Positions 4,812 to 63,685 of a stretch of DNA of 64,000 nt are shown piece by piece. The stretch spans positions 29,450,001 to 29,514,000 of the forward strand of contig NC_087248.1 in assembly GCF_037042905.1 (NCBI RefSeq), in the 5' to 3' direction. The notes under the pieces are model-generated. The model made no database searches. It was given only the letters and a program-made list of their open reading frames with translations, and was not told the DNA's origin. Origin of the DNA: Lytechinus pictus (lineage: Eukaryota). The position numbers and the translations under genes were made by a program. Positions within the stretch are counted from its first letter, which is position 1, and each line of letters starts with the position of its first letter.

Positions 4812-6777
4812 CCTAAAGATTTGCAATCAATCACCAAATGCCAATGACCAATCAAGATTATTGTTACAGGACACTTTGTTTAAAACACTGACTAGGAACC
4901 AATCAGAGTGGCTCTTTCATTATTTGCAATTCATGGCAAATATTTATGGTATGGGGGGCCCCAGTAAGTAGGCATTGCTGGTAACAAAGGAAATTTATAT
5001 CTTTGAGATGAAGTGGTACATAGTACCTCTCTAAATATTTTCAAACATAAATTGAAATTAACGTTGATTAATGTGGCAAACACGTTTTTTTTCTTTTTTT
5101 TATGTACACTCTAAATGCTGACAGTTGTAATTAATTGGCATTTCTTTATGCATTATTTTCATTTCATCGTCCGCTCCTACAAATTAAGACATCATATTTT
5201 TTTTATCCTGCAGACCTAACAAGCTTTGCTTTTTTTATGCAGGTTCCCTCATATTTCACCATGTTTTAAATTGTCTTTGATTTCAAATCGCTGTATTATG
5301 CAATTTAGATGAATGTTGCTATGTCTTATTTTTTATACGATTTTATTTCTTCTGATCTTATATCGTTTTTGTACTATGTTCATGATTATGTGAAATGTGT
5401 AAATAAAGTCAATATCAATATCAATTATTATTATTAGAAACGAAGATTAATAAAAAAAATATCAAGTTATATATAAAAATCTATAAGATAACATCCAAAA
5501 AATGAATAAAAGTTTAAAAAAAGTAAAATTAAAAAAGAAATGAACGCCTAAAGGAAAACCTTATATAATCAGGTAATAAGAGTATTTATATTTCCATTTT
5601 GATTTATTCTATCTTTTCTAAGCGAACAGTTTTGAGAAAAACAAGGAAACATAATGAAGGGGTTCTGATCAACCGAAGCACACAGATTGCATGATATGAA
5701 TTGTTTTCGGTGAATTTTGCATTTCAAATTCATAGCCTACCCCACAAGCAATTTTGAAAAGTTGCAAATATGTTAAACGGCTGATAATAACTTCATACAA
5801 TAAATTAAAATCAAAATCACTGATTCATATGGTGGGTAAATCACAATTTGTAAGGTTATTATATTTTTGCTCCAAGGAGTCTATCCCATGCTAAATTGGG
5901 ATGAATTTTTTTTTTTTATGTGAGGTTTTATCAAACAGTTCAAGTTAAATTGAGAGATTAGGTTCAAGATTTTTTTTTATTTTATAGCTGGAGAGATGAA
6001 GTTCGGGAGCATTGACCTCTTGCTTTGCTAATGGGCTAGCCTGACCTCTTGTGAGGTCACGACCCCTTGGCAGAAAAACAGAGAAGAGGGGGCCAAGGCC
6101 GGTGGCAAGGCTGTGCCCTTGCCTGACAATCGACAATTAAGGGAAATCTCTCTCTTGCTCTTTCTCCCGAGCCTAGCCTCAGAATCGAGGCAGAAATCAA
6201 CTGACAACAGAAAGATTGAAATAATAAACGAGGTCTTTCCGGACGAAGTTAGTATAGTAGAGATTGGATGTGTTACTCATTCACAAGTGCACTTTTTAGT
6301 TCTATCCCCGTTTTTTTCTTTCTTTCTTTCCCCTTGATTTACAGGTTTCCAAGGTCATATGGGAAGCATATAAACCTGAGCTTTGTATGTACTCGGCTTG
6401 AGAGAGCACAATGGGCCAAAGACCTTGAGGAACATGCACAAATGTTCTCCATTGTCTGCTCAAATCTGTTTTCAAATGAATCGTTAAATGAAGCTGAAAT
6501 CTGTTTGCAATACGGAAGGCAGGTCAATCGCACTATGGAAAATTAATGGAGGGAAGGGATGCACTGTGATTTGTGTCCAATTTATTGGTGATTTTATAAT
6601 TTTAAGTGAAGGTGCTTTTTTAATGTTTTGTTGATTGAATCTAGGAACTTTATTTTCCCTTTTCCGTGTGATCTTAGATTAGAGCTGTGTATAATAACTT
6701 CAATAGGTTGCTTAAATAAAGAATTTTATCTAATGCTTCCATGTATTCATTCCCTTTTCTATATACTTCTCTCATTA

Positions 6778-7250
6778 GGTGGTTTCAAACCGCCTCGATC
6801 ACAAGAATCCCCGTTAAATTACGAGAACATTTTTAGGCTAAAAAATACCCATTAATTATTCCTGCATTCAGACCGCCCCGAAACATACACTTCGGGATAA
6901 ATTCCTGAACTTAGGAGCATGTGCAGTATGGTCTAATAAGCAGGCAAGGCGCGAGATTCAAAACTACTAGCCCAGCAGCCACCAACGGCGCCGCACCCAA
7001 CGACACGCTGGGCTAAAAGTTCCCGGAATTTGCTTTCACATCGCCAAAATACCTGCGACCTTGGAAAAATCCCCGCGAAAGTTCTCGTAATTTCGCCAAG
7101 TACCTACTATTTAGCGGGTATTTTCTTTCGGGGAAATTACGCATAGTTTGCTTTCACATTACCAAAATACCTGGTATTTTCTGATCGGGGTAAATTTCCC
7201 GATCAGAGAATACCTGGAACTGACGAACTTCGAGGCGGTCTGAAACCAAC
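6778..7250 (+). mobile_element. PIF/Harbinger-like MITE family D, copy 1
   Basis: TIRs GGTGGTTTCAAACCGCCTCGA / TCGAGGCGGTCTGAAACCAAC, TTA flank; inverted copy at 30044. Confidence 0.85.
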
Positions 7251-8959
7251 TTCTCTCTCATTGTTTCTCTCTCACTGATTTCTACTGTGCTATTCTGTCT
7301 GGGTCAATATTAGGAATTCAAAGAGCCACATTAAATTTAGGCCTATTATATGATTACCAATAGAATCTTCTATTTTACAGTTCAATAGGCACTGGCATTA
7401 CACTCGGCAGTGAATATAAAACAGGAAACAAGTTGTATACCGGTACTTCTTATTGATATAATCCATAACTTTTCCCTAATTTTTTTTTCTCAGATAAACA
7501 TTAATGAGCTCATATGCCTTGACTGAAATCCATATTAGATAAATTCCTAATGAGCTCATATCATATGTTATATCAAATGTGATATTATTGTTAGGGTGCT
7601 ATGATGAAACCAACCGCCCTTTCACATGGTAAAAAAAAATCATAGTTTGAATGATGATTCCAATGAAAAACAAGGCTATAGATGAATTTTAGCACGCGTG
7701 AAACCAAACTAGAATCTTGAACGCTAATCACAATTATGAATTCAAATTCCACTCCGGAGGTGAATTCCAGTTAAGTTTCACTCAAATTACGGGACAAATT
7801 TTCCGTGTGAAAGCTCTGATGATTCTAAAGACAAATGGTAATCATCATTACAGCGATGATTAAAGATAAACGTGTGAAAAGGTCCCAAGTTAATCCAGAA
7901 AAGTCTTTATTTACTTTTAAAAAAAAACGGAATTGGAGAAAGGGATTAGGCTTCAGGAGGAGATTGAGGATGAACGAGACATTTTTGCGGTTAGTCTCTC
8001 AAGGCAAAGCATATCAATTATCCCATATTGGATTGAGCATTTTCCACACACTAGAAGCCCCCCTCCCTCCCCCCCTCCTCCCCCATCCTCCTGATTAGAC
8101 AAAATACACCATTTCTAGTCTGTGCTTTTTCATTTCTTCTGGATCGACATGGGCAATGCCTTGCTAGCCAAGATATGCCAGGAAGTATCCGGTTTCACGA
8201 ATCGCTACAACTGAATGTCGCTCGGAATAGACGAGGATCAAGCGATCGGCGGGATTGCCTGTCTGTCTTTGTTCCGATTCCGCCAATTGGGCTGATCCGT
8301 GCAGGATGCTGGATTAGTGCGATTTAATGATTGCCAGGCTGTTTAATGACTTCTCTCGCACTTTTGCGATTTATTCATGTCGTATGTTATTGCCGAATGA
8401 CGGGACAAAAATGGCAAGGGACAGTGCCTGCATGCAGGGTTTAAGGAAGGCTAAGATGGTTGATCTGAGCCAAGGAGTTTTATCCAGGGAGTATTTCATG
8501 TAGTAAATAGGGCCTAATTGGTCGGTGATTTGAACCATTTGTTCTAAGCTACTGAAATCCTTGTACGTGGTTGGCTGCATTAAGCAAAGCCAATATTGAC
8601 AATGTTTTATAGACATGACTTGCGTTGTCTACCCGAGTTGAAACTTGCATCAATCTATCCGGCTTTGACAATTGGGCAATGTTATGTAAACTCTACAATA
8701 TCCTACCCATCTAACTTTGCTGTATTAGTTACTGGAAAAATGTTCAAAACACTTCACTTTTGGTCGATAATCAAGTGACTTTGGTCTTTGTCTTTGCTGA
8801 ATTCGTTAAGAGGTTTCTAAGTGGTGTATAACAGAGGGAGGGGTGGTTATGTACACAGGGACACTGCAGGGTGTATCATATTAAATGATTATCGACAACG
8901 CACATTCCCCAGCTTGGGCTAAGGTCAAGGCCGTTGAGGTTATTATTAACGAGGCCGTC

Positions 8960-9530
8960 TTGGAAAGAGACAATGTGAGCTTGATTGTGATGAAGAGTTC
9001 ATGTCTGACGAAACTCATTAGGCTCGCCGAAGGTTGATTGAAAAATAGGTGTGATAATGATCGGATGGATGGGGGATTGGGGGGGGGGGTGTGGGGAAAA
9101 GGGGCATCTTCTCTTCTTCACAGTGTAATGAAGCTGGGTTTTTTTTTTTTAGGATCTGGGATACAAAGCAATGAATCTGATTTTAGTGAAGAGTTCATAT
9201 CTTAACAAAACACCTCAGGCTACTCACTGATGTTTGATTGAAATTGGTGATGTGAGAATGATTTTACGAAGGGGGGGGGGGGTTCTACTTTAACAGATGC
9301 AGATCCAGATGCTTGTTCAGAATGTCATCTAGGATAGAAAGTAATGAATCTGATTTTAGTGGAGAGTTCATGTCGTAACAAAACTCATTAGTTAGCTCGT
9401 TGAGGGTTGATTGAAACATAGGTGTGAGTATGATTTTACAGAATGGGGGGGGGGGAGTCTTCTTTCCAGATGCTTGTTCAGATTGTCATCTAGGATACAA
9501 AGTAATGAATCTGATTTAAGTGGAGAGTTC
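8960..9530. repeat. Degenerate tandem repeat, ~160-195 bp period, about 4 copies
   Basis: Anchor G(A/G)AGAGTTCAT recurs at 8992, 9188, 9361 and 9522 with shared 'aatgaatctgattttagtg' and 'ggttgattgaaa...ggtg' blocks. Confidence 0.75.
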
Positions 9531-10437
9531 ATTTCTTTATTTCATTGGGTTCTTAGTGTTACAACTTGCTACTTACATCATAATGTGTGAAGGCAATGTG
9601 TAATAAGGTTAGCAGTGAATACAACTCGGTGATATATTTCTTGAAAAGATGGCTTAATGTTCCAGTGTGCTTAGCTGTTATTAAATGTTCAGATGTAGCA
9701 GTAATTCTAATCAAAGCTATTCATATAACACCAGTGAACTTTGGTTTTCATTCCTAAATTTGCAACAATTAATATAATACCTAGCACACAATAAAATACA
9801 TTCTCACAGAAATTAATGACTCAGAATAAACTAAGAGAAAATAATGGCAGATTAAAAATTAGGTTTTAGAGGTTAAGGATTAGTTTGTTTTTCCTTTTTT
9901 TTTTGTGGCGGGGGGGGGGGGGGAATAACTGCCCTCATTCTTTTTTCATAATGAACGCTGGTTTGATACCATCTTTTGAAAATGATAATAATGACCTTGA
10001 CTATGAGGAAAGATTCAAGTCCAACAAGGTGTATTACTATTTATGGAGCTGGGTTTGTATCAAAATGACTTGTACTTTTTTTTGCAAACCCTATATGGTA
10101 TTAGCAGAATTCAATAATGGAAAAATGTAGATGAAATGCAAGGAATTAGCTTGACTCTGATGAAGAATTCAATTCTTTTTATTACAGTTATATTCAATGG
10201 ATTTTCGGGTTGTAATTGATTTAAGATATTTCCTTTTTTACCGGTAGTCTTTTCAGATAAAATCTATAATTTGTAATAGCCGAGTATGTACACATTCTTT
10301 TTAGTTGTGCACAAATGTCTCCATCCTTTTGAAAATCTAGTCATCATTCAATGTATTGATTATTTTCCTTCTCTATTATGTCTTCATAACAGCATAATAT
10401 AAATAATGATAACATTGGAATTTTATTGTCCACGTAT

Positions 10438-10736
10438 ATAATAATAATAATAATAGTCAGTTCTTGTATAACGCATAACACATTATGAATAACGTCTCTA
10501 TGCGCTTCCAAAGGACTTGGATATTATTACCCCGGCTGTAGCTCAAGCAGCCTTTTTAGCGCTCGGCATTTCAAGGAATGAATTCCTGCCAGGTACCCAT
10601 TCACCTCACCTGGGTTGAGTGCAGCATAATATAGATACATTTCTTACTGAAGGAAAGTACCCCATGACTGGGATTTGAACCCGCGACCCTCTGTTTCAAA
10701 GTTCGGAGACTAATCTACTGGGCCACAATGCTCCAC
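10438..10736 (-). mobile_element. Full-length tRNA-derived SINE
   Basis: On the - strand: A box TGGCCCAGTAG, B box GGTTCAAATCC, central '...CAACCCAGGTGAGGTGAATGGGTACC' body, LINE-like tail ending in (TAT)n. Confidence 0.85.
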
Positions 10737-10904
10737 ATATATAGGGCACCATTGTGGGCCTATGTGCTGGAAATTGTTGTATTTTAATGAAAATGCGTGG
10801 AGTGACTGTGTTCTACTGCATAATTGACAATGAGATTGTGAAAAAACAGCACTTTTAAAGCTGACATTAAAGCAACTCTTCAATCTTTTATGAAAATCTG
10901 ATAC

Positions 10905-11050
10905 GTTGCATAAAAGTTACTGTATGGTATCTTTGCCATCCAATGGTATCTACCATGGTAACGCTGATCAACAGCCAATCAAAATCAAGGATTCCATGCA
11001 AGTTAGAATTGCATGGCAAAGTTACCATAACAGTAACTTTTATGCAATGA
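10905..11050 (+). mobile_element. Short MITE family F
   Basis: TTGCATAAAAGTTAC...GTAACTTTTATGCAA inverted ends; core 'ccatggtaacgctgatcaacagccaatcaaaatcaaggattcc' recurs at 13955, 21987 and 47755. Confidence 0.75.
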
Positions 11051-11652
11051 AGCCTATTTCTTTCTGTTGCGCATTGATATTAATATATTTATGTTTATTT
11101 TTTCTATTCCTTTTTCCTTCCTCGGCTTATCTTGGTGTGTCGTGACTCTGGCATCTTTCTGTTGTTATTACTTGCTACACCTTAACAGGTAAGTTGATAA
11201 TAGTATAAAAGCATACATTAAATGTCTAAATGTGGAAAACTTGTGCCCCTGGTAATTTATTATTATTTTTTGTTAAAAATAGGACAGAAGGATTATGATA
11301 ACATCTTTGGCTATCTATCTAGTACATTAACTAAGTCTGATAAGACTTTAAAAATAAAGTATGAAAATACAGCTATAGTGACACCCAGAGTAATGATAGT
11401 TGCACTTTTGTACCCTATCAAAAAACACTCTATAAATCAAGGTATTATTATAATTATTATCAAACCAAATCAAGAGATATGTTATTGAACTTGGGTAATT
11501 TTTCTTGTGATGTTATAAAAACTACAAGTTATATAAAAGAAACACTTATTCACAAGGGAAAATGCAATGAAGAAGTTGTCTTGTATTCCAAACTCATCTC
11601 TCACTGTCACACTTTAATTTTCCATGAATTTCACTCCTGAATCAGTTCAGTA

Positions 11653-11885
11653 CACAGTTAAAACACTGTTTAAAATTATATACAATATTGTTGACTATAT
11701 AAACCTCACATTAGTTGTTTAACAGTCTAAGCAACCATGCTGAATCTAGTAAGAATAAAGTTTTAAAAGTAAACTTTTTTGTAAAAGATGTTATGCTCTT
11801 GTTTAAACTGTTTAAACAACTATTGTATAGGTTCATGTAGCAAACAGAAATGTATAAAAATTTGAAACAACATTTTTTTGCTGTG
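11653..11885. mobile_element. CAC-terminated palindromic MITE (EnSpm/CACTA-like)
   Basis: CACAGTTAAAA...TTTTTTGCTGTG ends with internal symmetry; related degenerate copies near 13320-13540 and 49260-49432. Confidence 0.55.
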
Positions 11886-14014
11886 CAGGGTTTTATGAAT
11901 TCATTTATCAGATACTGTAATCAATAAAGACGCAATGAATTCTTATACAAGTGTTATTTAAGTGTTGTGTAAGGAAATAATAACTTATTTAGCTGATTCC
12001 TACAAAGATTCACACAATGATATCTCAATTGTTAAAGCATCAAGTTCATTCATTTCAGTAAAAGTGATCGCAATGTCAAGGCCTTGCCTTAATTTTTTCT
12101 GCTAATCCACATAATCTATATAATTAAAACTTCTGATTTTGGTGTCAGATAAACCCATTATTAGTTCCTTTTTGTTTTCACAATGACGTGGTTTCAAGTT
12201 CATTCCTGAAAGTGATGTGTGGTTTGAACAGTCGTCATGAATTCAATCATTTCCCCTTGTAATTTTGAACCTTTCAATGAGCTGTGGAATATTTTGGCTT
12301 TATGGTAATCTATAGAAGGAATTATTTTGCTCTTAATAGATGAATATTAATTTGAATAATGATTTTTCTGCCTTAAAACTACTGCATCAGCCTACATTGT
12401 AAAAAAGTACATAATATTCAGCTTTAATTGAATAATGTCATAATTGCAATATGTCAGTCAAAGATTGCAAATGAGAAATGGTTATCATGGTAATCATCTG
12501 AAAGTACTTTTACAAACTTATAAAAAATGCAAAACTTACCTAGGCTCTCATAATCAGTATACCCCAATATTTTAATTTATTTTGGCAAACTTGAACCATA
12601 TATTGACCAAAGCATCTAACGTTTGCACATTCATTTCAAATCTAGATGGGGGATGAGGGGGGGGGGGAAGTCGCCGTTCACCCATCATTTCCTGAATGTT
12701 CACCATAAAAGGAAAGTTCATTTTGTGTTGTATTCTGATTTTGCTCCTGATTTGAAGTTTGTCCTTGTGAACTTTGTTGACATTTTCAGGGTTATATTCT
12801 AGGTTTTTGGAACAACAATTTCATACACAGCCAGCTGAGAAAGAAGGCCAACAAATTATCTGCCCCAGATCACTGGAGAGAGAGAGAGAACGAAAGAGAA
12901 AAATTAGCTCTAGAGAAAGAGCATGGCTGGAAAGAGAGAAGTACATGTGACTTAGCAAAAAACATTATGAATTTGTAGACCTGATTTGAAGGTCAAATTG
13001 TAATCCTTATTTCACATCCCTGGAAACTCATTGATTAAAATTTCTCCTAAAGTTTCTCTCTCTTTATAAGTATATTGAAATGAAATATAAAATAGGGGAA
13101 TCCCAACATATTTATTTTCATATCTTCAGATGGAAGTAGGATTAGAGTAACAGAAAATATCATCCATGACAAAAGATTTGGGTCAATGATGATATTAATC
13201 CAAATGCAAAATACTTTTTTATAATTCAGTATTCGAGTGTAGAGCTCAGGAAGGTAGCTTCTTGTTGAGAAGTTCTATATAATTTTGTTTAGGATTCAAT
13301 GATTGTATCTGTACAACTATACAGTAGAAATGTTGTTTAAAACTTGTATACAATGTTGTCTAATACATGAACTTGACAGTAGCTCGACAGATTAAACAAG
13401 TGTTTAAATTTTTAAGCAACAATTAAGTTTAATTTTACATATGAAATCTTCAATTAATTAAGCATGGTTGTTTAAATTGTCAAATAACTAATGTAAAGTA
13501 AACAGCATTTTATACATTTTAAATAGTGCTTTTACCGAATAGCCTATAGGCCCTAAGGGAATTATACACTCTTTTTCAAATCTGTGTTCTCCATTCAAGT
13601 CATATTGATTTGTTTTCCAATATATTTTGACTGAAATGGTCAATATATAACTGCCATAGAGTTGATTTCTTGCTATTTCCATTCGTAGTCAAATTCATTA
13701 AGACAATCAGAGTCACTTTACCTTTGCAAAGAGTTCAACATAAATTCAAGTTGACTGAAATGCCAACAATATTTTTTAAAGAACACAAGAAAATGACAGC
13801 CAGACAATTGTTTGAGGTTTCCATAATGAACCCTTGATACTAACTGTATAGATATAATCCAAGAAATATAGCAATTTATTTTCAATTTAAAGGTAAGGGA
13901 GAAAATTTAATTACAAATTTCAACATTAACATGTTAAATCAAATCTTGTTCTATTGCTTTGCCATCCAATGTCATGAAATCCTTGATTTTGATTGGCTAT
14001 TGATCATTATTACC

Positions 14015-14137
14015 ATATCGTCGCCTTCCCACAAAAGGGCCGTTATCGTGCAGTGAACAGTACGCGCTAACGGGTTTTGTGCGGGAAGGCGACGCGCAGT
14101 CCGCGCTAACGGCCCTTTCGCGGGAAGGCGACGATAT
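14015..14137. mobile_element. GC-rich palindromic mini-element inserted into a family F MITE (13955-14172)
   Basis: ATATCGTCGCCTTCCC...GGGAAGGCGACGATAT arms; the host family F sequence resumes on both sides. Confidence 0.75.
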
Positions 14138-14877
14138 GTTACCATTCGATGGCAAAGGTTTTTTGATAGTAACTTGTATGCAACAGGACCCCAGAAGTGT
14201 GAAAATAAGTTCTAAATAAAATTGGAATTAAAATTTCAATTCAGATTAACAGGAATCGCCCATAATTCCAGACAAACCCAAGGATAGTTTCTCCTGCAAT
14301 GTGATGTTAAGACTAATTATTGATCATTATTGGTAATGATGAAACCCCAGTAGGGTCCCATCCCCTGCGAGCCCCGCCCTTCCACTGACTCCCAACCTTG
14401 AACTGTAGAGCAATGGCTTGAAGTAGGCCAGGGATCATCGACAAACAATAGTACAAGGTCGCCACGGTAACGTCTGTCTGGAAAACAAAAGTAGACATGG
14501 GTTGCTCTCCGCTGTCTCCAAATCTCATCTTTCCTCATTTCATGCTCTGCGATCGATCGATACATCGCGAAACGATATCGTCGCTCAAGGCCGGCTGTAT
14601 GTACTTTAGGAATCACTTACAAGGGCTGTTCTCATGAAGAGAGGGATAGAGTGATAATGAGTTTGAGAAGGAGAAATAAAATTTTGGATGAATGAAGAAC
14701 GGGGAAAAGTGGAGAATTTACAATGTCGTGTGACCTTTCATTTGCATCTGCCATTTCAAGAATTGAATCTTTTGTTTTGAAACGGAACCATTGTCAATAA
14801 TCAAGGCTAGATGTGATCTAAAATCACTTGTATTTCCTTGAATATAAAACAATGTGACTGAATGAGAAAGGGATTTT

Positions 14878-15289: not shown

Positions 15290-15374
15290 TTAGAGAGCGA
15301 AGGCCGGTGACAAGGAAAAACATTGAAAAAAATAATGGGAAGAAAAGATGTAATTATTTTTTATTAAGCCAGTC

Positions 15375-15970: not shown

Positions 15971-16023
15971 TCTGTTTATATTATATTATTTGATAATCAG
16001 AGGTAACAAAGTTTGTATACTAA

Positions 16024-54400: not shown

Positions 54401-55119
54401 TTCAAAGAATTATTTTTTTAATATATAGAATTAAAATATAGGAAGGTAAAATCATCATCGATTTTCTTTATTGATGTAATAATTCAAGAGTATGCAGTTG
54501 TGAATAATACCCAGTACACAAAATAACCAAGTAGGCCTATATTTCTTGAGAATTATGCTCTGCTCGTTGGGGCAAAACAACTTCACCTTAAATTACATAA
54601 TTTCCATGGTATAAACAATATGCAGTTATATGTTTGTCAAGATATTTCATTTCTATAAAACAAACAAAATTGAAGCTGGTTTGTTATTTTTTCTTCATTT
54701 TTAGTAAAACAAAAGAATGAAATCTATGTAGAGTGTATAGTAAAACGCAGCAAGGAAACAGTATGTCTATAGGATAAAAAGGACCTTTGTGAATATATAT
54801 GCACTTTTTATATATCTTTTACACATTTTAAAAACATTTCTCTCATTGTATAGCAATCCATTTCCTAATGCGTATTTGATTACTTGGAAGACAACTATAT
54901 CCTCTGACTCTTATTGATACATTAATAAGAAACCTAAAGGCCACCTTGTGATTTGCAGTTTCTTTTCAACAGAAATGGCATTCAAAGTTTCTTCAGAATT
55001 ATGATGATGTCAAAGAATGTAATGGTTGTACCTTTTTTTTTACAGCTAACTATAGGAGTTTGCTAATGTTAGTAAATGACATCATGCTGTAACCTCTCTT
55101 TCAACTTAATATGGAGAAG

Positions 55120-55650
55120 TTTGTCACAAATTGGCCTTGGGAGTAACAGAGAAAGAGAGGGAGAGGGAGAGAGAGAAAACAAAGCTGAAACTGACAATAG
55201 CTGTCATTACTCATATGAAAGCACTAAGCTCCGCCTCCTGTATACTTTCTAGACCAATCAGAGGAGAGTTCATATATCCTATAGCCCTGTCAAGGCCAGC
55301 CTTGAAACATCACTCAGCTGTGACCATAGCCACACACAAGAGCCAGACGCTAATCCTGCTCTGTGATTGGCCGCTTGCCATGAGATAGTCAACAAACCCA
55401 CATAGCACACAGGGCAATGGCATCAGAGGGCACTGAGCCAGCCAGGTCGTCTAATGCATGCTCAAGGTTTTTCGGCAGACTGTGTGTGTCTGTGTGTGTT
55501 ATAGTGTTATGACTTGTGCAGAAAGCTTTCAAAGGCCACGCCTCCTCCACCTCTCTCTCTCTCTCTCTCTCTCTTGCAGGCAGCTAGCTTTACGCATTGA
55601 ACTATCTATATACTAGCTTGACATTTACGGAGTTTATTATTAGTGTGAAA
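55120..55650 (+). promoter_or_regulatory. Putative promoter of the LXXLL ORF / NR0B locus
   Basis: CCAAT at 55254 and ATTGG at 55366; GC/KLF-type boxes at ~55229 and ~55535; NR5A sites TGGCCTTGG (55132) and TCAAGGCCA (55290); TAATCC at 55351; TATATA at 55607 with an Inr-like TTAGT at 55640. Confidence 0.6.
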
Positions 55651-55953
55651 GACACAGTGCTTCGAACAGACCGTACTGGTGTTCTCTCGCAGAATATGAG
55701 TAAAAGTTGAATCAGGAGTGAATGGCCATAACATTCATCACGTGGATAGTATTGCTTACAGATCGAATTTGCACTACCGGCCTGCTTACTGACTGATCTT
55801 GATATTATAAATTCAGGATTCTTTATTTTCTGCAGGAGAATTTTCTTATCACAATATTTAGTGAGTTTTCAAGGAAGTAAACATTGCATCGGTTGCTTCA
55901 GATTCAGTGTTTGTGGAATATCTTCACTCCGTTAGACAAACTGACCGCTTTGG

Positions 55954-56436
55954 ATGTTGTATGCAAGCGTTGCCCCGACCAGTTGCGATAGAATGCACCA
56001 CATGTCTCAGACGCAGATCGAGAGCAGCAACCAGCCACTCAACCTTAGCCACCCCTCCAAGCTCAAAGCCAAGCTGTCGGCCCGTCACCACCACGCCATG
56101 ACCGCCGCGGCCCGTTCCCGCTCCCCATCCAGCTCGCCCCCATCTTCCATCTCCTCCACGACCCCATCATCCATCACCAAACCCAAAGCCAGGATGGGAT
56201 CGCATCACCACCACCATCACCATCATCACCACCATCACCACGACGATAAGGAACGCTCCTGCAATTGTCCACAGCTAGACTCGAAGAACACTATCCTCTA
56301 CCGACTCCTGACAGAAGGGTACAGCTATTGGACTCCTGTTTGTTGTATTGGTGGAAAGTGCCACGATGGACACATCCTAGGACAGAGCAAGTTAAAAATT
56401 CTCCTGGAGGAGAGCAAGAGACAAGCAGTGCAATAA
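55954..56436 (+). CDS. NR0B (DAX1/SHP) N-terminus-like ORF: PLNLS, poly-His and two LXXLL boxes; self-contained 160 aa (147 aa from ATG 55993)
   Basis: GC3-rich codons unlike the flanks; SCNCPQLDSKNTILYRLLT resembles SHP CPCQG..PAILYALL and DAX1 GSILYSLL; SKLKILLEE resembles SHP LKKILLEE (from memory); in-frame TGA at 55942 upstream, TAA at 56434, strong donor AG|GTAAGA at 56501/56502. Confidence 0.75.
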   Translation: MLYASVAPTSCDRMHHMSQTQIESSNQPLNLSHPSKLKAKLSARHHHAMTAAARSRSPSSSPPSSISSTTPSSITKPKARMGSHHHHHHHHHHHHHDDKERSCNCPQLDSKNTILYRLLTEGYSYWTPVCCIGGKCHDGHILGQSKLKILLEESKRQAVQ

Positions 56437-56904
56437 GGGCTGCTCCTAGCGAGAATCCATGGGCTAGCGGCAATAAGTGATTTAGGACTATTTATTGTTA
56501 GGTAAGAAAGAAGAACATTTCACTTTTTCCTCACAGAAATGCACTTGTTGTTACAGGCCTTTTAATGATATTAGGAAGGCCACTTTTTTCACACAAACTG
56601 AAGTAGGAATTCATTTAAAACATACTTCTGCAATTTTTTCTGTTCAAAGTGTTAAAAAAGGGCCTATTTGAGATGACTTCACCGACATGACCCATCTTCA
56701 TCAAATGTGGCATCTATGAATCTATCAACTATGAAGCCTTTTTGTAAAACAGTAGATGAATTCCTGCTTTCATCATTTTTTCCAATCACTCTACTGAAAC
56801 CATAAGTACAGTTTTTATGAATGGTTAAAAACGTGTATCATGACATGAATATAGTGAGTGTTTTCTGGACAGACAAAAACATCCAGTGCACATTGATTCT
56901 ACAA

Positions 56905-57110
56905 ACACTACAGATTAAGATAATTATCCCTAATCCAGGGCAGATTACACTAATCCCAATCACATTTATTTTCCTCTAATCACATTCGATTCATTAGCTT
57001 TCCCTAATCCATGGATTTACCTAATGGTTTATTTCATATGGTCTACTATGACAATCATGTGTCATAATCACTAATCCAAAGACTTAGACATTATACATTA
57101 GAGATTAAAG
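56905..57110. promoter_or_regulatory. Cluster of K50-homeodomain (Otx/Pitx/Gsc) sites, candidate intronic enhancer
   Basis: TAATCC at 56931, 56951, 57005 and 57072; AGATTA at 56912, 56942 and 57102; TAATCA at 56977 and 57065. Confidence 0.55.
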
Positions 57111-59214
57111 GAATTGCTGAGGCTTCTCCCTTTGTAATACAAGCTACAATTACACTTTCTATAGTTGTATATATAACAGGATCATGTAATTAGTGAGATT
57201 TGTTAATACATAGATATTAGATACTACATTGTTTCATTGGTGACTATTTTGGTCTTTCCCCCATCTTTCCGTCTTATAAATTGCATTTTATTTGCATTAT
57301 ATTGCAAGATAAACAGTTTTCTTTCTGTTTATTTAAAATGAGAATTTGTTTCATTAACCCTATCTATTACTTTAAACATTTAAGATGATTACCATGTAAA
57401 TAGGAAAAAATTCAACTGAATGAATGCTGTAATGACTAATGGAAACAAAAATCATGTGTCAAAATAGGCCAAAATCTTTATTGATTCATTAAATATGTAG
57501 GAGTTGCCCATCATGCCCACAATTATGGATAACTGAATAAACTGGATAAGTTCAACCCTTGACAAAAATAATATGAAGCATTGGTTAAATTCACATGTGA
57601 AATTCCATTCATACATCATGGTCAATCAACTTGCATTTTGCTATGGAAATGAAACATATATGTCTCATTTGAAATCTGATTTCCCGTCAAGCATCCAAGG
57701 GCTAAAGAGTAGTGTCTTTGCCTGAGGATTTTCAATGTTTTTCCCTTACTAATGTGTATATTTTGCACGGACTCTGGATTATAAAAAAAAAGTGATTTGG
57801 CAGGGCAATGGATGAGGTAATGTCTGCATCACACATAGAACTAAATTTCACTTTCAAGCATACTTTTATTGATTTTTTTTTCAAAGCAAATGTTGAAATT
57901 GTTAATTTTGGTGAGGCTATATAATTCCTGTTAGGTGGGCCTTATTATACTGTTTAGTTAAGCTACGACTCTTGAGTACAAGCTAGCACTTTCTTATGTT
58001 ACATGTACATGTAGGTCTACATATCCCAACTTTGGTAAGCTATAACGTTTCAGTTCGTTAAGAACGGCAAGAGGATTAGACTAGAACTCTCTGCACTCTC
58101 TGAAATGTTTCAACCAACCTATCAGTTGGTTAAAATGTTGCTCGACCAATTGCTGGTTAAAAACAAAATTGCCTGCAGAAAGAATCCTTATATTACCCAA
58201 TAGTTGGCTGGTTCATATTGTAATCAACTTTTGGGATATTAACCATTATTTGCCTAGGGTTGGTTAGAAAATATGCTGAATGAAGCTTGCCCTATCAGAG
58301 GTACACTGCCCCCCCCCCCCTCTTATTTTGTTACTGCTGCTGCTGGGCTTGACCAAGGAAATGACCATATGGTACACTGGTCAATTGACCAATGTACTGT
58401 ATGACCTTTTGTCTCCTCTCTCTCTCTCTCTCTCTCTCTCATTTGCACTCCTCTAGCTCTTTGCTTTATCTTTTCATGTCTGTCCCTCTTTATGTCATTT
58501 TCTCCCTCCCTTTTCTCTCCCCTCATCTTTTCTTTTTCTCTTTATCTTTGTTTCTCTCTTATATATTTATTATCTTTCTCCCTAAACTTTCTACTCTCTC
58601 TTTCTATTTAGTGTTTTACAAGCAAAGGGATGTATAGGTTTTCTTCCAAAGGCCATTTACTTCCTCGCAAATCAACGGGTCAAGGCCGTCGCTTTTAGTT
58701 ATACAGAGCGTTGGAATGCCAATATTCATTTTCAATTAACCAAGGATTAATGGGGGCAGTAGGAGTTGTCATAAAATAACAATAAATATTCATATTTGGA
58801 CAAGCATCTTCTCTTTCTCTTTCCCTCGCAACACACAATATTGCTAAGTCAAATTAAAGTTTGTGATTATTCATTTCCAACAGAAAGACAAAATAATATC
58901 AAGCTAGTCTTTCAGACTCATTTGTATATCCCCTATTTTAAAGGCTTTGTTAGCATTTTATATTGCTCTAAAATTATATGAAATTTTCTTGTCTAAAAAA
59001 TGTACATGTTCACGATAGTACAGCTTTGCTTTTGTGAAATTTGTATTATTCATATACATATATATTATATATACAAAAATATTTATTTAATCATGAAAAG
59101 AGTGTGTATAGAGTTGGTTATGTCAACTGTGTTTATTAATGACTGATTGATTCAGATTACCAAGGCATTGTTTCAATTACATGCATTAAGAATAATAACA
59201 TGTATACATAGCCC

Positions 59215-59602
59215 GGGTAAACTGCCAACTCATCCGCTCACCACATGGTCTACTTTCATTTAGTCTAATGCCATTCAGTCTATCAACATTTCGTCTAACA
59301 ACTGTTTGGTCTTTTAACCATTTGGTCCAATCATCACTTCGTCTAATCACCATTTCGTCCATAACCAGTTGGTCTAATATCCATTTGATTTTCATTCATT
59401 TTGCACAATTTAACGCTCGGTCCAATTAGACCAAATATAATATGGACTAAGTGGCTATTGGACCAACTGGTTATCAGACGGAACGGCATTAGACTAAATG
59501 AAAGTAGACCATGTGGTGAGTGGACGAACTGATGATAGACCAAATGATAGTAGACGAGTTGGCAATTGGACGAATTGGCATTAGACGAATTGGAAATAAA
59601 CC
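59215..59602 (+). mobile_element. GG-terminated MITE, copy 2
   Basis: TSD CATAGCCC at 59207-59214 and 59603-59610; same body as 50196. Confidence 0.85.
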
Positions 59603-60008
59603 CATAGCCCCTTCCCGCCTCATGACCATCATGGCTGGCTCAGATGCAAGAATATCTAATGAGTTCAATAATCAATAGATTATACAGAGAGGAGATTACA
59701 AGCGGATGTAACTCAAGTTATATCAATCCCCACCTTGTGTAGAGAAACCTTGTGCTGCGCTTATCGCAAGGTCGTAGCGCGATTACATCAAGACCAGTTC
59801 TGTTTTGAAATCGTTGAATGGAAAACAAGTCTTTATTGATTACGCGGAGGCGATGAGTTTTCTGGAAATGTTTTCATGATGTCAAGCTCTGGCCAGGTGG
59901 CACAGGTGTTGTTCTCAGGATATCACAGTGACGTTCTCATGTTCTTATTTACATCTGATCAATGTTGTCATTATATATAGTAAACCCTTAATTTCATGTT
60001 ATTTACCC

Positions 60009-60385
60009 TTAAAGATAAATACCAGTTTTGGTAACAATCTCAAAATGAGTTCGAACAGAATCCAATAAAATTACCACCCAAGTGTTTGTATGTATGAATA
60101 GAAAATATGTGCTAAGTGGCTCTGGGAGAAAATGTGTAATTGCTGAGAAATGAGCAAAATAAGCACCGAATTCCATCAAATGTTGGGTATTTTATCCGAG
60201 CAATATTAATACACTGTCCCACTCCCACATATGCTTTCCTGTGTTAGTGATCATCAGAATTATCGCTTTTTAACTAAAATTTCATGACTTCACAAAGATA
60301 AGGATATTTCAATGTACCAGACCTTGATTTTAAAGACTTTTTCATGAAATAATTGTTTGCTGCAACTACTGTCTTTTACATTTAA
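60009..60385 (+). mobile_element. Kolobok-like MITE family B, diverged copy 3
   Basis: TTAA-AGATAAATACCAGTT...TTTAA; colinear with 4417-4811. Confidence 0.7.
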
Positions 60386-61090
60386 AGCTTTAGACAATAC
60401 AAACATTACAATGTAAAACAGTTTTTTGGTCTGTAAATTCTGTTTTACATGGTGTACAGACTTTTTTCACATAATTCTTTTCAAGCATTGTCTGTCATCA
60501 TGAAAAAAAAAGAATATTGCTAAGCTGGTTAAAGCGTAGCAGCTGTGAGAGCGGGAGAACCTTGAATCAAGGCTACTTGTATTCAAGAGGAAAGAGCAAA
60601 TCATAACTATATTTAGTTTAGCCTTCCTTCCTGTTCACCTTGAGTTAAAATCAATGAATACAAGCAAGCATCGATATCTGCAAAACATTTCATTTGATTA
60701 ACTTCTGTTGACTGAAAAAAATAACTGTTGACTGAAACAACATCATGAAAAAAAAGTATTGTATTTACTTTATTTTAAATTTGTACATGAAGTTGAACTG
60801 GGAAAGATGGAATTCAGAACTTTCTCTGAACTGAATTTATTATCAAATAATGTGAAAATACATTGATACAAGGTAAAGTGTCATATACTTCATTGGTATA
60901 AGGACTCCACAGAAAATTATAGCAAGTACTGCTAGTGGGACATGGAACCCTATCCTACAACATAATTAATAGCATGAAATAACGTTTAAAAGTAAGTTAA
61001 CATGTTTATTGTTTGAAGTTTATTATCTATCAACATGATGATACAATCTACATTGTAAAGATGATTAGTAAACTAACCAATTTATGGAGA

Positions 61091-61212
61091 CAGTGTCACA
61101 GTGGCGGGCCGTGACCCAGAGGAGACAAAGCATTGGAGGGGCACTGTATTGTTTGTGAACAATGATGTGCCCCTCCAATGCTTTGTCTCCTCCGGGTCAC
61201 GGTCCGTCACTG
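61091..61212. mobile_element. Near-perfect palindromic hAT-like mini-element
   Basis: CAGTGGCGGGCCGTGACCC...GGGTCACGGTCCGTCACTG; 8-bp TSD TATGGAGA at 61083-61090 and 61213-61220. Confidence 0.85.
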
Positions 61213-61577
61213 TATGGAGATAACAAAATTATTCAAAACATAAATGTGGATAAAAATGATATGCAGATCAGAGGTGCAGCTTTTTTAATTTAGCCCTTAA
61301 TACATGATACAAACATTAAAAGAATACTCAAAGTAAAAATACACCATAAAGATATTGAGCGAATACATTTGATGGGGAAATAAAAGATAAACTAAAAAAA
61401 AAATGATTATATCTTGTAAATTCTTGTTAAAATAGAAGTCACAGGTACACTATTCTCTTTCAGGTGATCCTATTATGTCCATTTTAACATCTCGAACAAA
61501 ATGAATTTTAGAAGAGTAAAGATGATATAATAAATCAAAATTATGCCCCAAACCAATCATTATCAGGCCACAATATC

Positions 61578-61958
61578 GGTAAATTGCCAATTTGTCTACT
61601 GCCAACTCATCCGCTCACCACATGGTCTACTTTCATTTAGTCGAAAGCCATTCCGTCCATCACCATTTCGTCTAACAACCATTTGGTCCAATCATCACTT
61701 TGTCTAATCACCATTTCGTCTATGACCATTTGGTCTCATAACCAGTTTGTCTATCTCCATTTTAAAATTCGTTCATTTTGCACAATTAGTCCAAATTGAC
61801 CAAATGGTAAATGGTCTAAATAGCTATTGGACCAACTGGTTATTAGACGGGAAGGCATTAGACTAAATGAAAGTAGACTATGTGATGAGTGGACGAACTG
61901 ATGGTAGACCAAATGATATAGTAGACGAGCTGGCAATTGGACGAATTGGAAATCGACC
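61578..61958 (+). mobile_element. GG-terminated MITE, copy 3
   Basis: GGTAAATTGCCAAT...AATTGGAAATCGACC; same body as 50196; TSD not preserved. Confidence 0.8.
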
Positions 61959-63685
61959 ATTTTAATTGGGGTAAGTTATTTGGTGGAGGTGGATTATCAA
62001 TATAGCGACAAAGTAATTGTGCTTTTCCATTCTGATCATAAGGGTCTGATTTAAGTTAGACTAAACAAAAAAAATGTTCATGTCACATGTGTTGTTACAG
62101 CTTCTATTTTACTCAAACATAATTTTAGAAGGCCTTAAGCCAAGGCTAACCCTTCTGCTTTCTGGCTCCATGGATGTTGATGTTCATAGTACAGTCCCAT
62201 TGGTCTTGTACTTCAAACCCTTTATACAAAGATGACACCTGTTCCATATTTAGATGATTCTTTTTTATGTGTTACCAGGCAACGATCATGTTAGACAATT
62301 CTAGCCATACACCAATTTTCTTGGGAGAAAACATTCTTTGTACTTGTCAACCTTATGTGTTGTGTTTCTTTCAAACTTCTCAAATTTAAGTGTCTAGAGA
62401 GAGCCTGGTACAAAGACTATTTTATTTAGCCTTGGAGACTGATTTGTGTTCAGTAACACTCCAGTTCATGTTAGCCTGCATGTTTGCATTGTTTACCAGT
62501 CAAAATTAATTAACGTAGAAAGCGCCTCAAGGTTCCTTTCTGCATCAGCTTAATTCTCCGACCTTACATCAGCTTTTATTTTTCCTCCAGGATAGGTTAA
62601 ATCTCCTGGCAGAATATTGATCCATGCTCATGAGTGGAGTCCTTGGCTAGACAAAAGCCTGGCTAAGAGACTAATGTCCTCCTTTCTTTTGTTCTGGAGT
62701 TGAAATCATATCCTCCAATGCATATTCCAAGACATTGTCTTCTGTAAATTTGTTAGAACAAGGACTTACTCCAAACTAATTGATAGATGAGAATAGTCAG
62801 TTTGCGTCAATTACATCTTAGTGCATGTTGGGGTGGACGTCATGTTTAACCTTGTTGTTTAAGATGGTTATTTTTCAGCATGAATTGCAGTGGTTTCTCA
62901 TATTCTCTTGCTAATTGGCCAGGATATTGTCCTTGGCTTGTCATGTCAAAGATGAAACATGGCCTCATTAGACTGAATCTTGCTGTGAGTTGTGATCAAT
63001 TTTCTTTATTTAAAACAAAGTGTACGCTTAATTATTTAATGAAAATTTTAATGAATACAGTGAAGGTCGGCGGAGATGGTGTATATATAGGATTTCTCTA
63101 AAAAGATACTGTTAATGAAAAAGATAACAATATTTGTATACAATTTTTTTCTTCTGTTTGTTACAAGGCATTTCTCACACTTGAATGGGTGATCCTCAGA
63201 TACCCATACTTTTTCAAGTAAAAAGTAAACCAAAATTGCTGATGTGTACGGTTTGGGCCAAACATTTGATGAAGTCCCACGTATGCATCTTTACGTGCAG
63301 TGTGTGCGACTTACATCAAAATGGGAATCGATTTCTGATCATTTCCATCATTCTGAAATCTTACTGGATCATTTCTTTATTTAGAAGTTTGAGACTTTTT
63401 TTCTTCATTCTCATCAATCCTATGTCCAAACTCGGGGCGATTTGATGTCCTGTGAAAAGTGCGAAATTGTCCATTTTCCTTCTTACATTGTATACCTCCA
63501 CTGTGTCGTTAACTTTATGAAGACTTCTGATTTTTTTATTAGTTCCATGATTTTCTCATTTTTGATTTTACCAAGCCTATGTCGATCATGCCATGTTATC
63601 ATGGCTGCTACTGTTGTTTGCCCCCCTGTATTAAAAACGAAGTAATATTTGAATAATTTTCTCCTTTCATTCTCTTCCGCTGCAG

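What the first reader, a model, noticed from the sequence alone, without database searches (positions are those of the whole stretch)
6000..62200. Locus-wide excess of NR5A/ERR monomer sites (CAAGGYCR): candidate ancient NR5A-NR0B feedback loop
Seen by eye, either strand, outside recognised MITEs: 6093, 6349, 8925, 9992, 14453, 14585, 28470, 34118, 35132, 37753, 39084, 45534, 49893, 53692, 55132, 55290, 58680 and 59766. Four more lie inside MITEs (7057, 21225, 26963, 30239), and near matches occur at 6105, 6420, 12076, 18858, 33998, 60558-60575 and 62140. A rough zero-order estimate assuming ~35% GC predicts about 3 in 64 kb; this is a hand estimate that ignores local GC variation. Most hits fall in GC-richer unique islands. 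Established: SF-1/LRH-1/FTZ-F1 and ERR bind YCAAGGYCR; vertebrate SF-1 and LRH-1 activate DAX1 and SHP, which repress them through LXXLL boxes. Inference: the same negative-feedback circuit is wired into an invertebrate deuterostome across a more than 55-kb regulatory domain.
Basis: partly seen in the sequence, partly recalled or inferred. Interest (0 to 1): 0.85.

Follow-up and report, generated by a model that had tools for sequence, protein, structure and literature searches.

The report
NR5A-type sites fill NR0B intron
A sea-urchin DAX1/SHP-like (NR0B) gene has a 195-kb intron carrying about three times the genome's usual density of the DNA word bound by SF-1/LRH-1-type receptors; the same excess occurs in sea stars, where many sites are conserved, so the vertebrate NR5A-to-NR0B link may be ancient, though binding is untested.

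Summary
All 22 CAAGGYCR sites exist, against 5.1 in shuffles and a genome mean of 7.95 per 64 kb (Lytechinus pictus).

The window is not upstream DNA. It lies inside the ~195-kb single intron of a two-exon, DBD-less NR0B-like gene. Exon 1 is 132 kb before the window and exon 2 is at 63686-63930.

The excess covers at least 160 kb of intron (52 non-repeat sites, 19.9 expected) and ends at the gene's 3' end.

It replicates in the orthologous loci:
- Two sea stars have 26 sites each, the top-ranked of 960 matched patterns and about 3x control loci.
- A crinoid has 5 sites in 10 kb of intron.
- Between the sea stars, 14 of 26 sites lie in conserved blocks and 9-10 are retained, against 25% for matched 8-mers.

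It encodes a conserved LBD-less LxxLL mini-protein. Two sites lie 200-500 bp upstream of its start.

The sites are probably functional and fit a monomeric nuclear receptor, NR5A best. Occupancy and the feedback arm remain inference. The canonical CAAGGTCA word is barely enriched against the genome total.

The parts
6094..6101 (+). CAAGGCCG site, single copy
6350..6357 (+). CAAGGTCA site, single copy
7056..7063 (-). CAAGGTCG site inside a MITE-like repeat (copies at 30240 and 4.2 kb upstream of the window)
8926..8933 (+). CAAGGCCG site, single copy
9992..9999 (-). CAAGGTCA site, single copy
14454..14461 (+). CAAGGTCG site, 132 bp from the next site
14586..14593 (+). CAAGGCCG site
21225..21232 (-).
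26963..26970 (-). CAAGGTCA site inside a young repeat (100% identical copy of at least 208 bp, 41 kb upstream)
28471..28478 (+). CAAGGCCG site, single copy
30240..30247 (+). CAAGGTCG site inside the same MITE-like family as 7056
34119..34126 (+). CAAGGCCG site, single copy
35132..35139 (-). CAAGGCCA site
37754..37761 (+). CAAGGTCA site
39084..39091 (-). CAAGGTCA site with further AGGTCA-like half-sites nearby
45535..45542 (+). CAAGGCCA site
49893..49900 (-). CAAGGTCA site
53692..53699 (-). CAAGGTCG site
55132..55139 (-). CAAGGCCA site (CCAAGGCCAA), about 350-500 bp upstream of the internal transcription start
55291..55298 (+). CAAGGCCA site within the near-palindrome CAAGGCCAGCCTTG, about 200-350 bp upstream of the internal transcription start
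58681..58688 (+). CAAGGCCG site in the short intron between exon 1b and exon 2
59767..59774 (+). CAAGGTCG site in the short intron between exon 1b and exon 2
1..63685 (+). 3' part of the ~195.5-kb single intron of the NR0B-like gene. Exon 1 lies at C4:29317442-29318125, about 132 kb upstream of window position 1.
   Evidence: P0003 residues 12-215 and 213-294 match two abutting pieces on the same strand; orthologue gene spans of 147 kb and 181 kb; no helix 3-9 coding sequence anywhere in the 264 kb held.
55100..55650 (+). Internal promoter region (P2): CCAAT boxes near 55255 and 55366, two CAAGGCCA sites, near matches at 55461 and 55531. Transcription starts at about 55484-55653.
   Evidence: zero read depth at 54501-55100, then contigs starting at 55484 and 55653; sequence.
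55484..56501 (+). Exon 1b, transcribed and ending at the canonical donor TTAG|GTAAGA
   Evidence: an 849-nt contig at depth 733 ends exactly at 56501, with depth 23 beyond; a relative's 948-nt contig continues off the stretch; donor sequence.
56002..56436 (+). Conserved small ORF (144 aa from the conserved Met; the first ATG is at 55954). It encodes an NR0B-type N-terminal box (CNCPQLDSKNTILYRLL) and SKLKILLEESKRQAVQ, then a stop, with no LBD.
   Evidence: dN/dS 0.055 between the two sea stars; only 'hypothetical' homologues
63686..63930 (+). Exon 2 of the NR0B-like gene (LBD helices 10-12 and stop), after the acceptor ...ccgctgcag
   Evidence: COUP-TF2 1.9e-13, DAX-1 4.7e-7. PF00104 at 18.8 bits..

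Best explanation
The 22 sites are part of a much larger, gene-bounded field of CAAGGYCR words. The field fills the giant intron of the Lytechinus pictus NR0B (DAX1/SHP)-like gene and extends to the promoter of an internal transcript.

Most likely, many of these words are working binding sites for a nuclear receptor that binds DNA as a monomer through a 5'-CA-extended half-site. NR5A (Ftz-F1/SF-1/LRH-1 type) is the best candidate. The sites would be spread over many intronic enhancers and the internal promoter, making the NR0B-like gene a direct target of that receptor in echinoderms, as DAX1 and SHP are in vertebrates.

Shown here:
- the excess itself;
- its restriction to the gene;
- its recurrence in three other echinoderm species;
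- positional conservation of the sites between two sea stars;
- an active internal promoter with two sites just upstream.

Inferred:
- the identity of the binding factor;
- that binding activates transcription;
- that the NR0B-like protein, or the LxxLL mini-protein, feeds back on that factor through its conserved ILYxLL box.
For: Enrichment in the urchin:
- 22 sites vs 5.1 in shuffles, and rank 1 of 960 matched patterns.
- 2.8x the genome mean, P = 3e-5.
- Not explained by local composition or by a general CpG effect. The 300 same-composition one-CpG words average 0.35, while CAAGGCCG has 6.
- The intron from -100 kb to +60 kb has 65 sites, 52 after repeat masking, against 19.9 expected (P = 1.5e-9). 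The 100 kb 3' of the gene has 14 against 12.4 expected.
- Specificity: the pattern words have observed/expected ratios of 4.9-7.4. Most one-base neighbours are at 2-3. Changes at A3, G5 or C7 are at 1 or below.
- A profile scan finds none of the non-repeat sites inside relics of the AGGTCA-rich tandem repeat.
- The sites pair or cluster mildly: 7 gaps of 150 bp or less against 2.8 expected, P = 0.015.

Replication in other species:
- Patiria and Acanthaster have 26 sites each in about 56 kb, against 6.4 and 7.6 expected, and rank 1 of 960 in both.
- That is 4.6-4.7 per 10 kb against 1.5 per 10 kb in 60 kb of control flanks, p = 3.9e-4.
- The crinoid has 5 sites in the 10 kb of intron before the last exon and 1 in the 10 kb after it.

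Conservation between the sea stars:
- 14 of 26 Patiria sites lie in the 22% of the locus that aligns to Acanthaster (p = 3.7e-4).
- 9 are kept as motif matches, 10 by inspection, against 25% for same-shape 8-mers (p = 0.002). This is the highest count of conserved instances among all 4,096 patterns.
- Neutral sites between the two species are saturated (dS about 1.0).

Gene identity.

Internal promoter.

Urchins have an NR5A (ftz-f1) and an ERR (PMC13666137).
Against: - No occupancy or perturbation data exist.
- The word is favoured genome-wide, at 2.35x its reversed control, and still ranks 4th of 960 in the non-NR0B downstream 100 kb. Part of the signal is therefore background.
- CAAGGTCA, the highest-affinity NR5A/ERR word by established knowledge, is only 1.4x the raw genome rate in the window.
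- The -1 base at conserved sea-star sites is C (10), G (8), T (2), A (0). G is not the expected pyrimidine.
- Conservation of the urchin window's own sites could not be tested. No second urchin locus could be fetched, and the read-laying output was truncated at the relevant places.
- The sea-star control is only 60 kb and uneven, with 6, 1 and 2 sites.
- A density of one site per 2.5-3 kb over 160 kb is unusual for classical enhancers.
Confidence: 0.5

Rival explanations
1. No function. The excess reflects this genome's general liking for the word, partly spread by transposable elements that carry AGGTCA clusters, plus regional heterogeneity in a large gene-poor intron.
For: - Genome-wide the word is 2.35x its reversed control, and many hits on contig C1 lie in 160-190 bp tandem arrays.
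- Two such arrays account for 8 of the 43 upstream hits.
- CAAGGYCR ranks 4th of 960 even outside the gene.
- Most one-base neighbours also sit at 2-3x the Markov expectation.
- An earlier scan note reports element families with clustered AGGTCA sites (s1-320161).
Against: - After repeat masking the intron still has 52 sites against 19.9 expected.
- A profile scan finds no non-repeat site inside a relic of the repeat.
- All four variants are enriched, not just the word the repeat carries.
- The same excess is seen at the orthologous locus in three other species whose repeats differ.
- Site retention between the sea stars is 2.5x that of matched 8-mers although neutral sites are saturated.
Confidence: 0.17
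2. The sites are functional and conserved but are read by a factor other than NR5A or ERR. It could be another monomer-binding receptor (GCNF/NR6A, NR4A, ROR/HR3-type) or a non-receptor protein that recognises (C/G)CAAGGCC.
For: - The -1 base at conserved sea-star sites is C or G in 18 of 20 cases.
- CAAGGCC forms dominate in sea stars, with 18 of 26 sites in each locus having C at position 6.
- In the urchin, AAAGGTCA and GAAGGTCA are also about 2.4x expectation.
- The genome holds 57 zf-C4 matches, so many receptors are available.
Against: The tolerated degeneracy (Y at position 6, R at position 8, with A3, G5 and C7 fixed) is exactly the published NR5A consensus PyCAAGGPyCPu (established knowledge). 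No other candidate factor is indicated by the data.
Confidence: 0.2
3. CAAGGYCR sites are a general ingredient of conserved non-coding elements around developmental regulator genes in echinoderms. The enrichment would then be real and functional but not specific to the NR0B-like gene, and would not point to a dedicated NR5A-NR0B circuit.
For: - The locus is rich in conserved non-coding blocks, 46 in 55 kb.
- The sites concentrate in those blocks, at 11.5 per 10 kb aligned against 2.8 per 10 kb unaligned.
- The only controls were a gene-poor flank in the urchin and retroelement flanks in the sea stars, not other regulator loci.
Against: The word is the single most conserved 8-mer pattern in these blocks, which points to a dominant input at this locus. 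No data from other developmental loci are available either way.
Confidence: 0.13

Closest known systems
Vertebrate SF-1/LRH-1 (NR5A) to DAX1/SHP (NR0B) negative-feedback loop (established knowledge)
   Same: - The target gene is a DBD-less NR0B-type receptor with an N-terminal LYxLL-type box and the same two-exon structure.
- The locus carries multiple PyCAAGGPyCPu sites, two of them promoter-proximal to a transcription start.
   Different: - The vertebrate sites described are a handful in the proximal promoters. Here there are dozens across a 160-195 kb intron.
- The promoter with proximal sites drives an internal exon that encodes an LBD-less mini-protein.
- Neither binding nor repression has been shown in any echinoderm; I found no paper on it.
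Homotypic clusters of transcription-factor binding sites in enhancers and promoters
   Same: Many copies of one motif near one gene, mild local pairing, and concentration in conserved blocks.
   Different: Classical clusters span hundreds of bases to a few kb. This field spans at least 160 kb at about one site per 3 kb.
Transposable-element tandem units carrying AGGTCA-type half-sites in this genome (earlier scan note s1-320161)
   Same: The 4-unit arrays at -98.7 kb and -15.6 kb relative to the window carry CAAGGTCAAAGGTCA in every unit. A related 8-unit array lies at window 40095-41242.
   Different: Only 8 of the 65 sites in the 160-kb intron stretch lie in such arrays, none of them in the window, and no non-repeat site is a detectable relic of them.
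DAX1 N-terminal LxxLL repeat domain and the human DAX1A alternative isoform that uses an exon inside the intron (established knowledge, from memory)
   Same: An extra exon inside the single NR0B intron, and a protein module built around C-x-C-P...ILYxLL.
   Different: Here the exon has its own promoter, and its ORF ends before the splice donor. The product therefore lacks the LBD entirely. It is conserved in urchins, sea stars and a crinoid.

Membership tests
NR0B (DAX1/SHP) nuclear receptor gene | Nuclear-receptor ligand-binding domain present | tested here: met
   Exon 2 in the window matches NR LBD helices 10-12: PDB COUP-TF2 1.9e-13 and DAX-1 4.7e-7, and PF00104 at 18.8 bits, below the cut-off on its own. 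Exon 1 at C4:29317688 matches PF00104 at 46 bits. The orthologues match PF00104 at 1.8e-15 to 6e-20.
NR0B (DAX1/SHP) nuclear receptor gene | No zf-C4 DNA-binding domain | tested here: met
   None of the 57 PF00105 matches in the genome lies within millions of bases of C4:29.3-29.5 Mb. The orthologues P0003, P0004 and P0002 hit only PF00104.
NR0B (DAX1/SHP) nuclear receptor gene | N-terminal LxxLL-related (LYxLL) box | tested here: met
   C-x-C-P-x6-[ST]-I-L-[YF]-x-L-L is invariant across six echinoderm NR0B-like proteins and the nested ORF. The L. pictus exon 1 aligns from P0003 residue 12, which covers the box, but its letters could not be read.
NR0B (DAX1/SHP) nuclear receptor gene | Two coding exons with the intron inside the LBD | tested here: met
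   P0003 residues 12-215 and 213-294 match two abutting pieces on one strand. The same split is seen in Patiria and Acanthaster. Transcript contigs in another species show the joined CDS.
NR0B (DAX1/SHP) nuclear receptor gene | Closest full-length LBD relative is NR0B rather than another subfamily | tested here: inconclusive
   For P0003 the best match over the whole LBD is DAX-1 (3f5c_B, 5.3e-27, residues 75-294), and SHP also matches (3.7e-20). COUP-TF2 scores marginally higher over the last 100 residues. NCBI names the orthologues NR0B1/2-like. No phylogeny was built.
Functional NR5A (Ftz-F1/SF-1/LRH-1) response elements | Match to PyCAAGGPyCPu | tested here: inconclusive
   The core CAAGGYCR is met at all 22 sites. 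The 5' pyrimidine is present at 15 of 22 window sites and 35 of 52 sites in the masked intron domain. At conserved sea-star sites the -1 base is C 10, G 8, T 2.
Functional NR5A (Ftz-F1/SF-1/LRH-1) response elements | More sites than the genome background | tested here: met
   2.8x the genome mean in the window. The masked intron domain has 52 sites against 19.9 expected. The sea-star loci are about 3x their control flanks.
Functional NR5A (Ftz-F1/SF-1/LRH-1) response elements | Evolutionary conservation of individual sites | tested here: inconclusive
   Met between the two sea stars: 9-10 of 14 aligned sites are kept, against a 25% base rate. It could not be tested for the window's own sites.
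Functional NR5A (Ftz-F1/SF-1/LRH-1) response elements | Occupancy by NR5A and a transcriptional response to it | not testable with these tools
   This needs ChIP or CUT&RUN plus perturbation. Only the presence of ftz-f1 and ERR genes in urchins is documented (PMC13666137).
NR5A-NR0B negative-feedback loop | The NR0B protein binds and represses NR5A | not tested
   Only the conserved LYxLL-type box is seen. No NR5A sequence from this genome was available for a complex prediction.

The most novel reading that the evidence does not exclude
An NR5A-to-NR0B regulatory module that predates the echinoderm-chordate split. Dozens of selected NR5A-type sites spread through a conserved giant intron would drive two products. 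One is the classical DBD-less receptor from the distal promoter. The other is a previously undescribed LBD-less mini-protein from an internal promoter, built on the LxxLL box (ILYRLL plus LKILLEE). The mini-protein would act as a stand-alone AF-2 competitor, giving the feedback loop a second, faster arm.
Probability: 0.15. Interest if true: 0.8.

Novelty: new member of a known kind. Interest (0 to 1): 0.55.

Why it matters
The SF-1/LRH-1 to DAX1/SHP loop is a textbook vertebrate circuit in steroidogenic, gonadal and hepatic regulation. Whether it predates vertebrates is not known.

This analysis turns an eyeballed motif count into a testable proposition. The same motif field marks the NR0B-like gene in three echinoderm classes (urchin, sea stars, crinoid), and it shows site-level conservation in sea stars. 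That gives concrete targets for ChIP, reporter and knock-down experiments in Lytechinus, a tractable embryo.

It also corrects the gene model to two exons separated by about 195 kb. And it uncovers an expressed, strongly conserved small protein that carries the NR0B LxxLL box alone. Genome annotation has missed it or labelled it 'hypothetical'.

Tried and rejected
1. Random sampling of the genome for an empirical per-window distribution. I did not try another route, so the background is the whole-genome mean plus the local flank.

2. Local GC or dinucleotide heterogeneity as the cause. Rejected: block-wise expectations stay at 4.4-5.1. A first attempt with full block shuffles timed out.

3. 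A general CpG-retention effect behind the CAAGGYCG surplus. Rejected: same-composition one-CpG words average 0.35 in the window.

4. One repeat family carrying the motif. Rejected for most sites by self-BLAST and a repeat-profile scan.

5. Decay of an ancestral CAAGGTCA-bearing repeat. Not supported: neighbours at other positions are much less enriched.

6. Rejected.

7. Fetching a second urchin locus or a brittle-star locus. P0001 is not on record. The Diadema and Amphiura gene ranges are too long. The P0160 and P0002 sample files are too large.

8. Deep DNA conservation between urchin and sea stars. Only coding pieces align: exon 2 and the small ORF.

9. Reading conservation of sites 58681 and 59767 from the relative's contigs. 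The difference table was truncated.

10. Pfam and the protein atlas on the small ORF. No hits.

Full report
OBSERVATION

Dinucleotide shuffles give 5.13 +/- 2.19, and none of 100 exceeds 11. Among the 960 patterns of the same shape (six fixed bases, one Y, one R) and the same GC content, CAAGGYCR is the single most frequent in the window, at 22 against a mean of 3.2. First-order Markov expectations computed in blocks from 64 kb down to 250 bp stay between 4.4 and 5.1. So the GC-richer flanks in which the sites lie (0.415 vs 0.36, p = 1.5e-4) do not explain the count. The flanks of the sites are unrelated to one another, with two exceptions: a MITE-like family at 7056 and 30240, and a young repeat at 26963. 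The near matches are one-mismatch sites.

GENOME BACKGROUND

The window is C4:29450001-29514000 of an 811.7-Mb assembly. A flanking retroelement ORF matches a Lytechinus pictus protein at 100% identity, which identifies the species.

The genome holds 100,863 sites, or 7.95 per 64 kb. The pattern read backwards gives 42,837. So the word is favoured genome-wide. Part of that comes from 160-190 bp tandem units reading CAAGGTCAAAGGTCA, in line with an earlier scan note on AGGTCA-bearing element families.

Against the genome mean the window is 2.8x enriched. Poisson P is 3e-5 for all 22 sites and 6e-4 for the 19 non-repeat sites.

Expected and observed counts per 64 kb, by word:

| Word | Expected | Observed |
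|---|---|---|
| CAAGGTCA | 5.2 | 7 |
| CAAGGCCA | 1.6 | 4 |
| CAAGGTCG | 0.73 | 5 |
| CAAGGCCG | 0.44 | 6 |

The surplus of the CpG-ending forms is not a general CpG effect. The 300 same-composition words with one CpG average 0.35 in the window, and CAAGGCCG is the top one.

EXTENT

I fetched 100 kb on each side. Upstream there are 43 sites, 33 after masking repeats. The window has 19 after masking. Downstream there are 14, equal to the genome mean. Across the 160 kb from -100 kb to +60 kb the masked count is 52 against 19.9 expected (P = 1.5e-9).

In that domain the three single-step pattern words have observed/expected ratios of 4.9-7.4 against a second-order Markov model (CAAGGCCG was not scored in that run). 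Most one-base neighbours sit at 2-3, and changes at A3, G5 or C7 are at or below 1. The generic half-site AGGYCR is barely enriched. A profile of the tandem unit finds no non-repeat site inside a decayed copy. The sites pair mildly, with 7 gaps of 150 bp or less against 2.8 expected.

Even outside the gene the word ranks 4th of 960, so some of the signal is background.

WHAT THE LOCUS IS

The ORF at 63649-63930 is the C-terminal exon of a nuclear-receptor LBD. Its closest relatives are short proteins with an N-terminal C-x-C-P...ILYSLL box and an LBD but no DNA-binding domain. For P0003 the best whole-LBD match among solved structures is DAX-1, and SHP also matches. NCBI names the echinoderm orthologues NR0B1/2-like.

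The helix 3-9 part of the LBD is absent from all 264 kb I hold. Searching the genome with P0003 resolves this. Residues 12-215 match C4:29317442-29318125 (E = 1e-35, in a 329-aa open frame). Residues 213-294 match window 63673-63921, on the same strand. So the gene has the vertebrate two-exon structure with an intron of about 195.5 kb. Window positions 1-63685 are intronic. No zf-C4 match lies near the gene. The orthologous genes span 147 kb (Diadema), 181 kb (Amphiura), 35 kb (Patiria) and 37 kb (Acanthaster). The motif field therefore coincides with the gene body, as far as I can see it, and ends at the gene's 3' end.

The ORF at 55954-56436 carries CNCPQLDSKNTILYRLL and SKLKILLEESKRQAVQ. 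It is conserved at protein level in Patiria, Acanthaster and the crinoid, always 2-7 kb before the last exon. In all four species it ends at a stop codon at the same place, with no splice donor there. Between the two sea stars dN/dS is 0.055 with dS about 1.0. Its homologues are unannotated or 'hypothetical', and it shares the invariant C-x-C-P...IL[YF]xLL box with the full-length receptors.

Public run contigs laid on 54501-60500 show the following:
- Depth is zero up to 55100.
- A same-species contig of 849 nt at depth 733 spans 55653-56501.
- Depth drops to about 23 beyond that point.
- A relative's contig starts at 55484.
- Contigs from three of the four runs end exactly at 56501.
- One relative's contig continues for about 670 nt that do not lie on the stretch.

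The sequence at that point is TTAG|GTAAGA. This is best read as an internal promoter with a start near 55.5-55.65 kb, and an exon 1b that contains the whole small ORF and is then spliced onward. The run type is only guessed as RNA by the tool, and the downstream exon was not seen.

The two CAAGGCCA sites at 55132 and 55291 lie 200-500 bp upstream of this start, among CCAAT boxes.

REPLICATION AND CONSERVATION

- Crinoid (Anneissia): the 10 kb of intron before the last exon has 5 sites and the 10 kb after it has 1. The Markov expectation for the whole 20-kb locus is 1.2, and the pattern is in the top 0.5% of matched patterns.
- Sea stars: the complete Patiria and Acanthaster loci with 10-kb flanks have 26 sites each, against 6.4 and 7.6 expected, and rank 1 of 960 in both. 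Flanks of unrelated retroelement insertions in the same two genomes give 9 sites in 60 kb, or 1.5 per 10 kb against 4.6-4.7 (pooled p = 3.9e-4). This control is small and uneven.
- Alignment: the two sea-star loci share 46 colinear blocks covering 22% of the Patiria locus. Fourteen of the 26 Patiria sites fall in them (p = 3.7e-4).
- Retention: nine sites are kept as motif matches at the aligned position, ten by inspection. Same-shape 8-mers in the same non-coding blocks are kept 25% of the time (p = 0.002). CAAGGYCR has more conserved instances than any other of the 4,096 patterns, and the runner-up overlaps its reverse complement. Because synonymous sites are saturated, this retention indicates selection.
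- Limits: no non-coding DNA aligns between urchin and sea stars. No second urchin locus could be fetched. So the window's own sites remain untested for conservation.

WHICH FACTOR

PyCAAGGPyCPu is the classical NR5A (SF-1/LRH-1/Ftz-F1) consensus (established knowledge). The tolerated degeneracy seen here, Y at position 6 and R at position 8, fits it. The abundance of AGGCCA forms fits NR5A better than ERR.

Two points count against a clean assignment. The conserved sea-star sites have C or G at -1 in 18 of 20 cases, and G is atypical. CAAGGTCA is the least enriched word against the raw genome rate.

Urchins possess ftz-f1 and ERR genes (PMC13666137). Invertebrate NR0B genes are known (PMC7827873). 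I found no paper on NR5A sites at an echinoderm NR0B locus.

VERDICT

The gene is NR0B-type, and the sites look like selected binding sites of an NR5A-like monomeric receptor. But the geometry was wrong: the region is an intron, and the nearby exon is an internal one that encodes a separate mini-protein. Both arms of the proposed feedback loop remain inference.

I put about 0.5 on functional NR5A-type sites making this gene a direct target. I put less, about 0.25-0.3, on a true negative-feedback loop.

Noticed in passing
window 55484-56501 (ORF 56002-56436, + strand); Patiria L024:40419-40748; Acanthaster L025:42404-42730; crinoid L023:7842-8015: An expressed internal exon of the NR0B-like gene encodes a conserved 110-145 aa protein. 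It has the NR0B N-terminal box (C-x-C-P...ILYRLL) and a second box (SKLKILLEESK.QAVQ) but no LBD, and it stops before the exon's splice donor. dN/dS is 0.055. Databases list it as unannotated or 'hypothetical'. It may be a stand-alone LxxLL competitor for receptor AF-2 surfaces. The urchin copy has a run of 13 histidines.
   Followed up: partly
window 40095-41242: Eight tandem units of about 157 bp related to the AGGTCA-rich 165-190 bp repeat seen at -98.7 kb and -15.6 kb and all over contig C1. This array has no exact CAAGGYCR match.
   Followed up: partly
L001:1200-2000 and L009:4200-5000 (window coordinates about -98.8 to -98.0 kb and -15.8 to -15.0 kb); window 26863-27070 and L009:5860-6070: Copies that are 99.5-100% identical, 83 kb and 41 kb apart inside the same intron. 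This indicates very recent transposition or segmental duplication of an element that carries the 4-unit CAAGGTCAAAGGTCA array.
   Followed up: no
Patiria L024 and Acanthaster L025, non-coding aligned blocks: A CRE-like word, TGACGYCR (TGACGTCA type), is retained in 5 of 5 aligned occurrences between the two sea stars. This suggests a cAMP-response-type input to the same locus. CAAGGYTR variants are kept in 5 of 7.
   Followed up: no
window-frame coordinates -41269/-41233, -9692/-9654, 98821/98862, 125578/125605; also window 55291-55304: Convergent pairs of sites (CAAGGYCR ... YGRCCTTG) whose starts are 27-41 bp apart occur four times in 264 kb, where about one would be expected. Two of them are outside the gene. 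Window 55291 is an overlapping near-palindrome, CAAGGCCAGCCTTG.
   Followed up: no
window 6094, 8926, 14586, 28471, 34119, 58681: All six CAAGGCCG sites in the window are on the + strand, the strand of the gene (two-sided p about 0.03, post hoc). The six in the flanks show no such bias.
   Followed up: no
L015:4612-9675 (- strand; 44.6-49.7 kb beyond the window's end): An intact 1,688-aa open frame of a BEL/Pao-type LTR retrotransposon (Peptidase_A17, DUF1759, Integrase_H2C2), 100% identical to an annotated L. pictus 'uncharacterized protein'. I used it only as a handle to identify the species and to sample sea-star background loci.
   Followed up: partly
L017:1500-1700 (window-frame coordinates about 125.5-125.7 kb): A locally very GC- and CpG-rich stretch (gggcgcggcccgctgattgcggcc). 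The downstream 100 kb has a higher CpG observed/expected ratio (0.6-0.8) than the intron (0.4-0.6).
   Followed up: no
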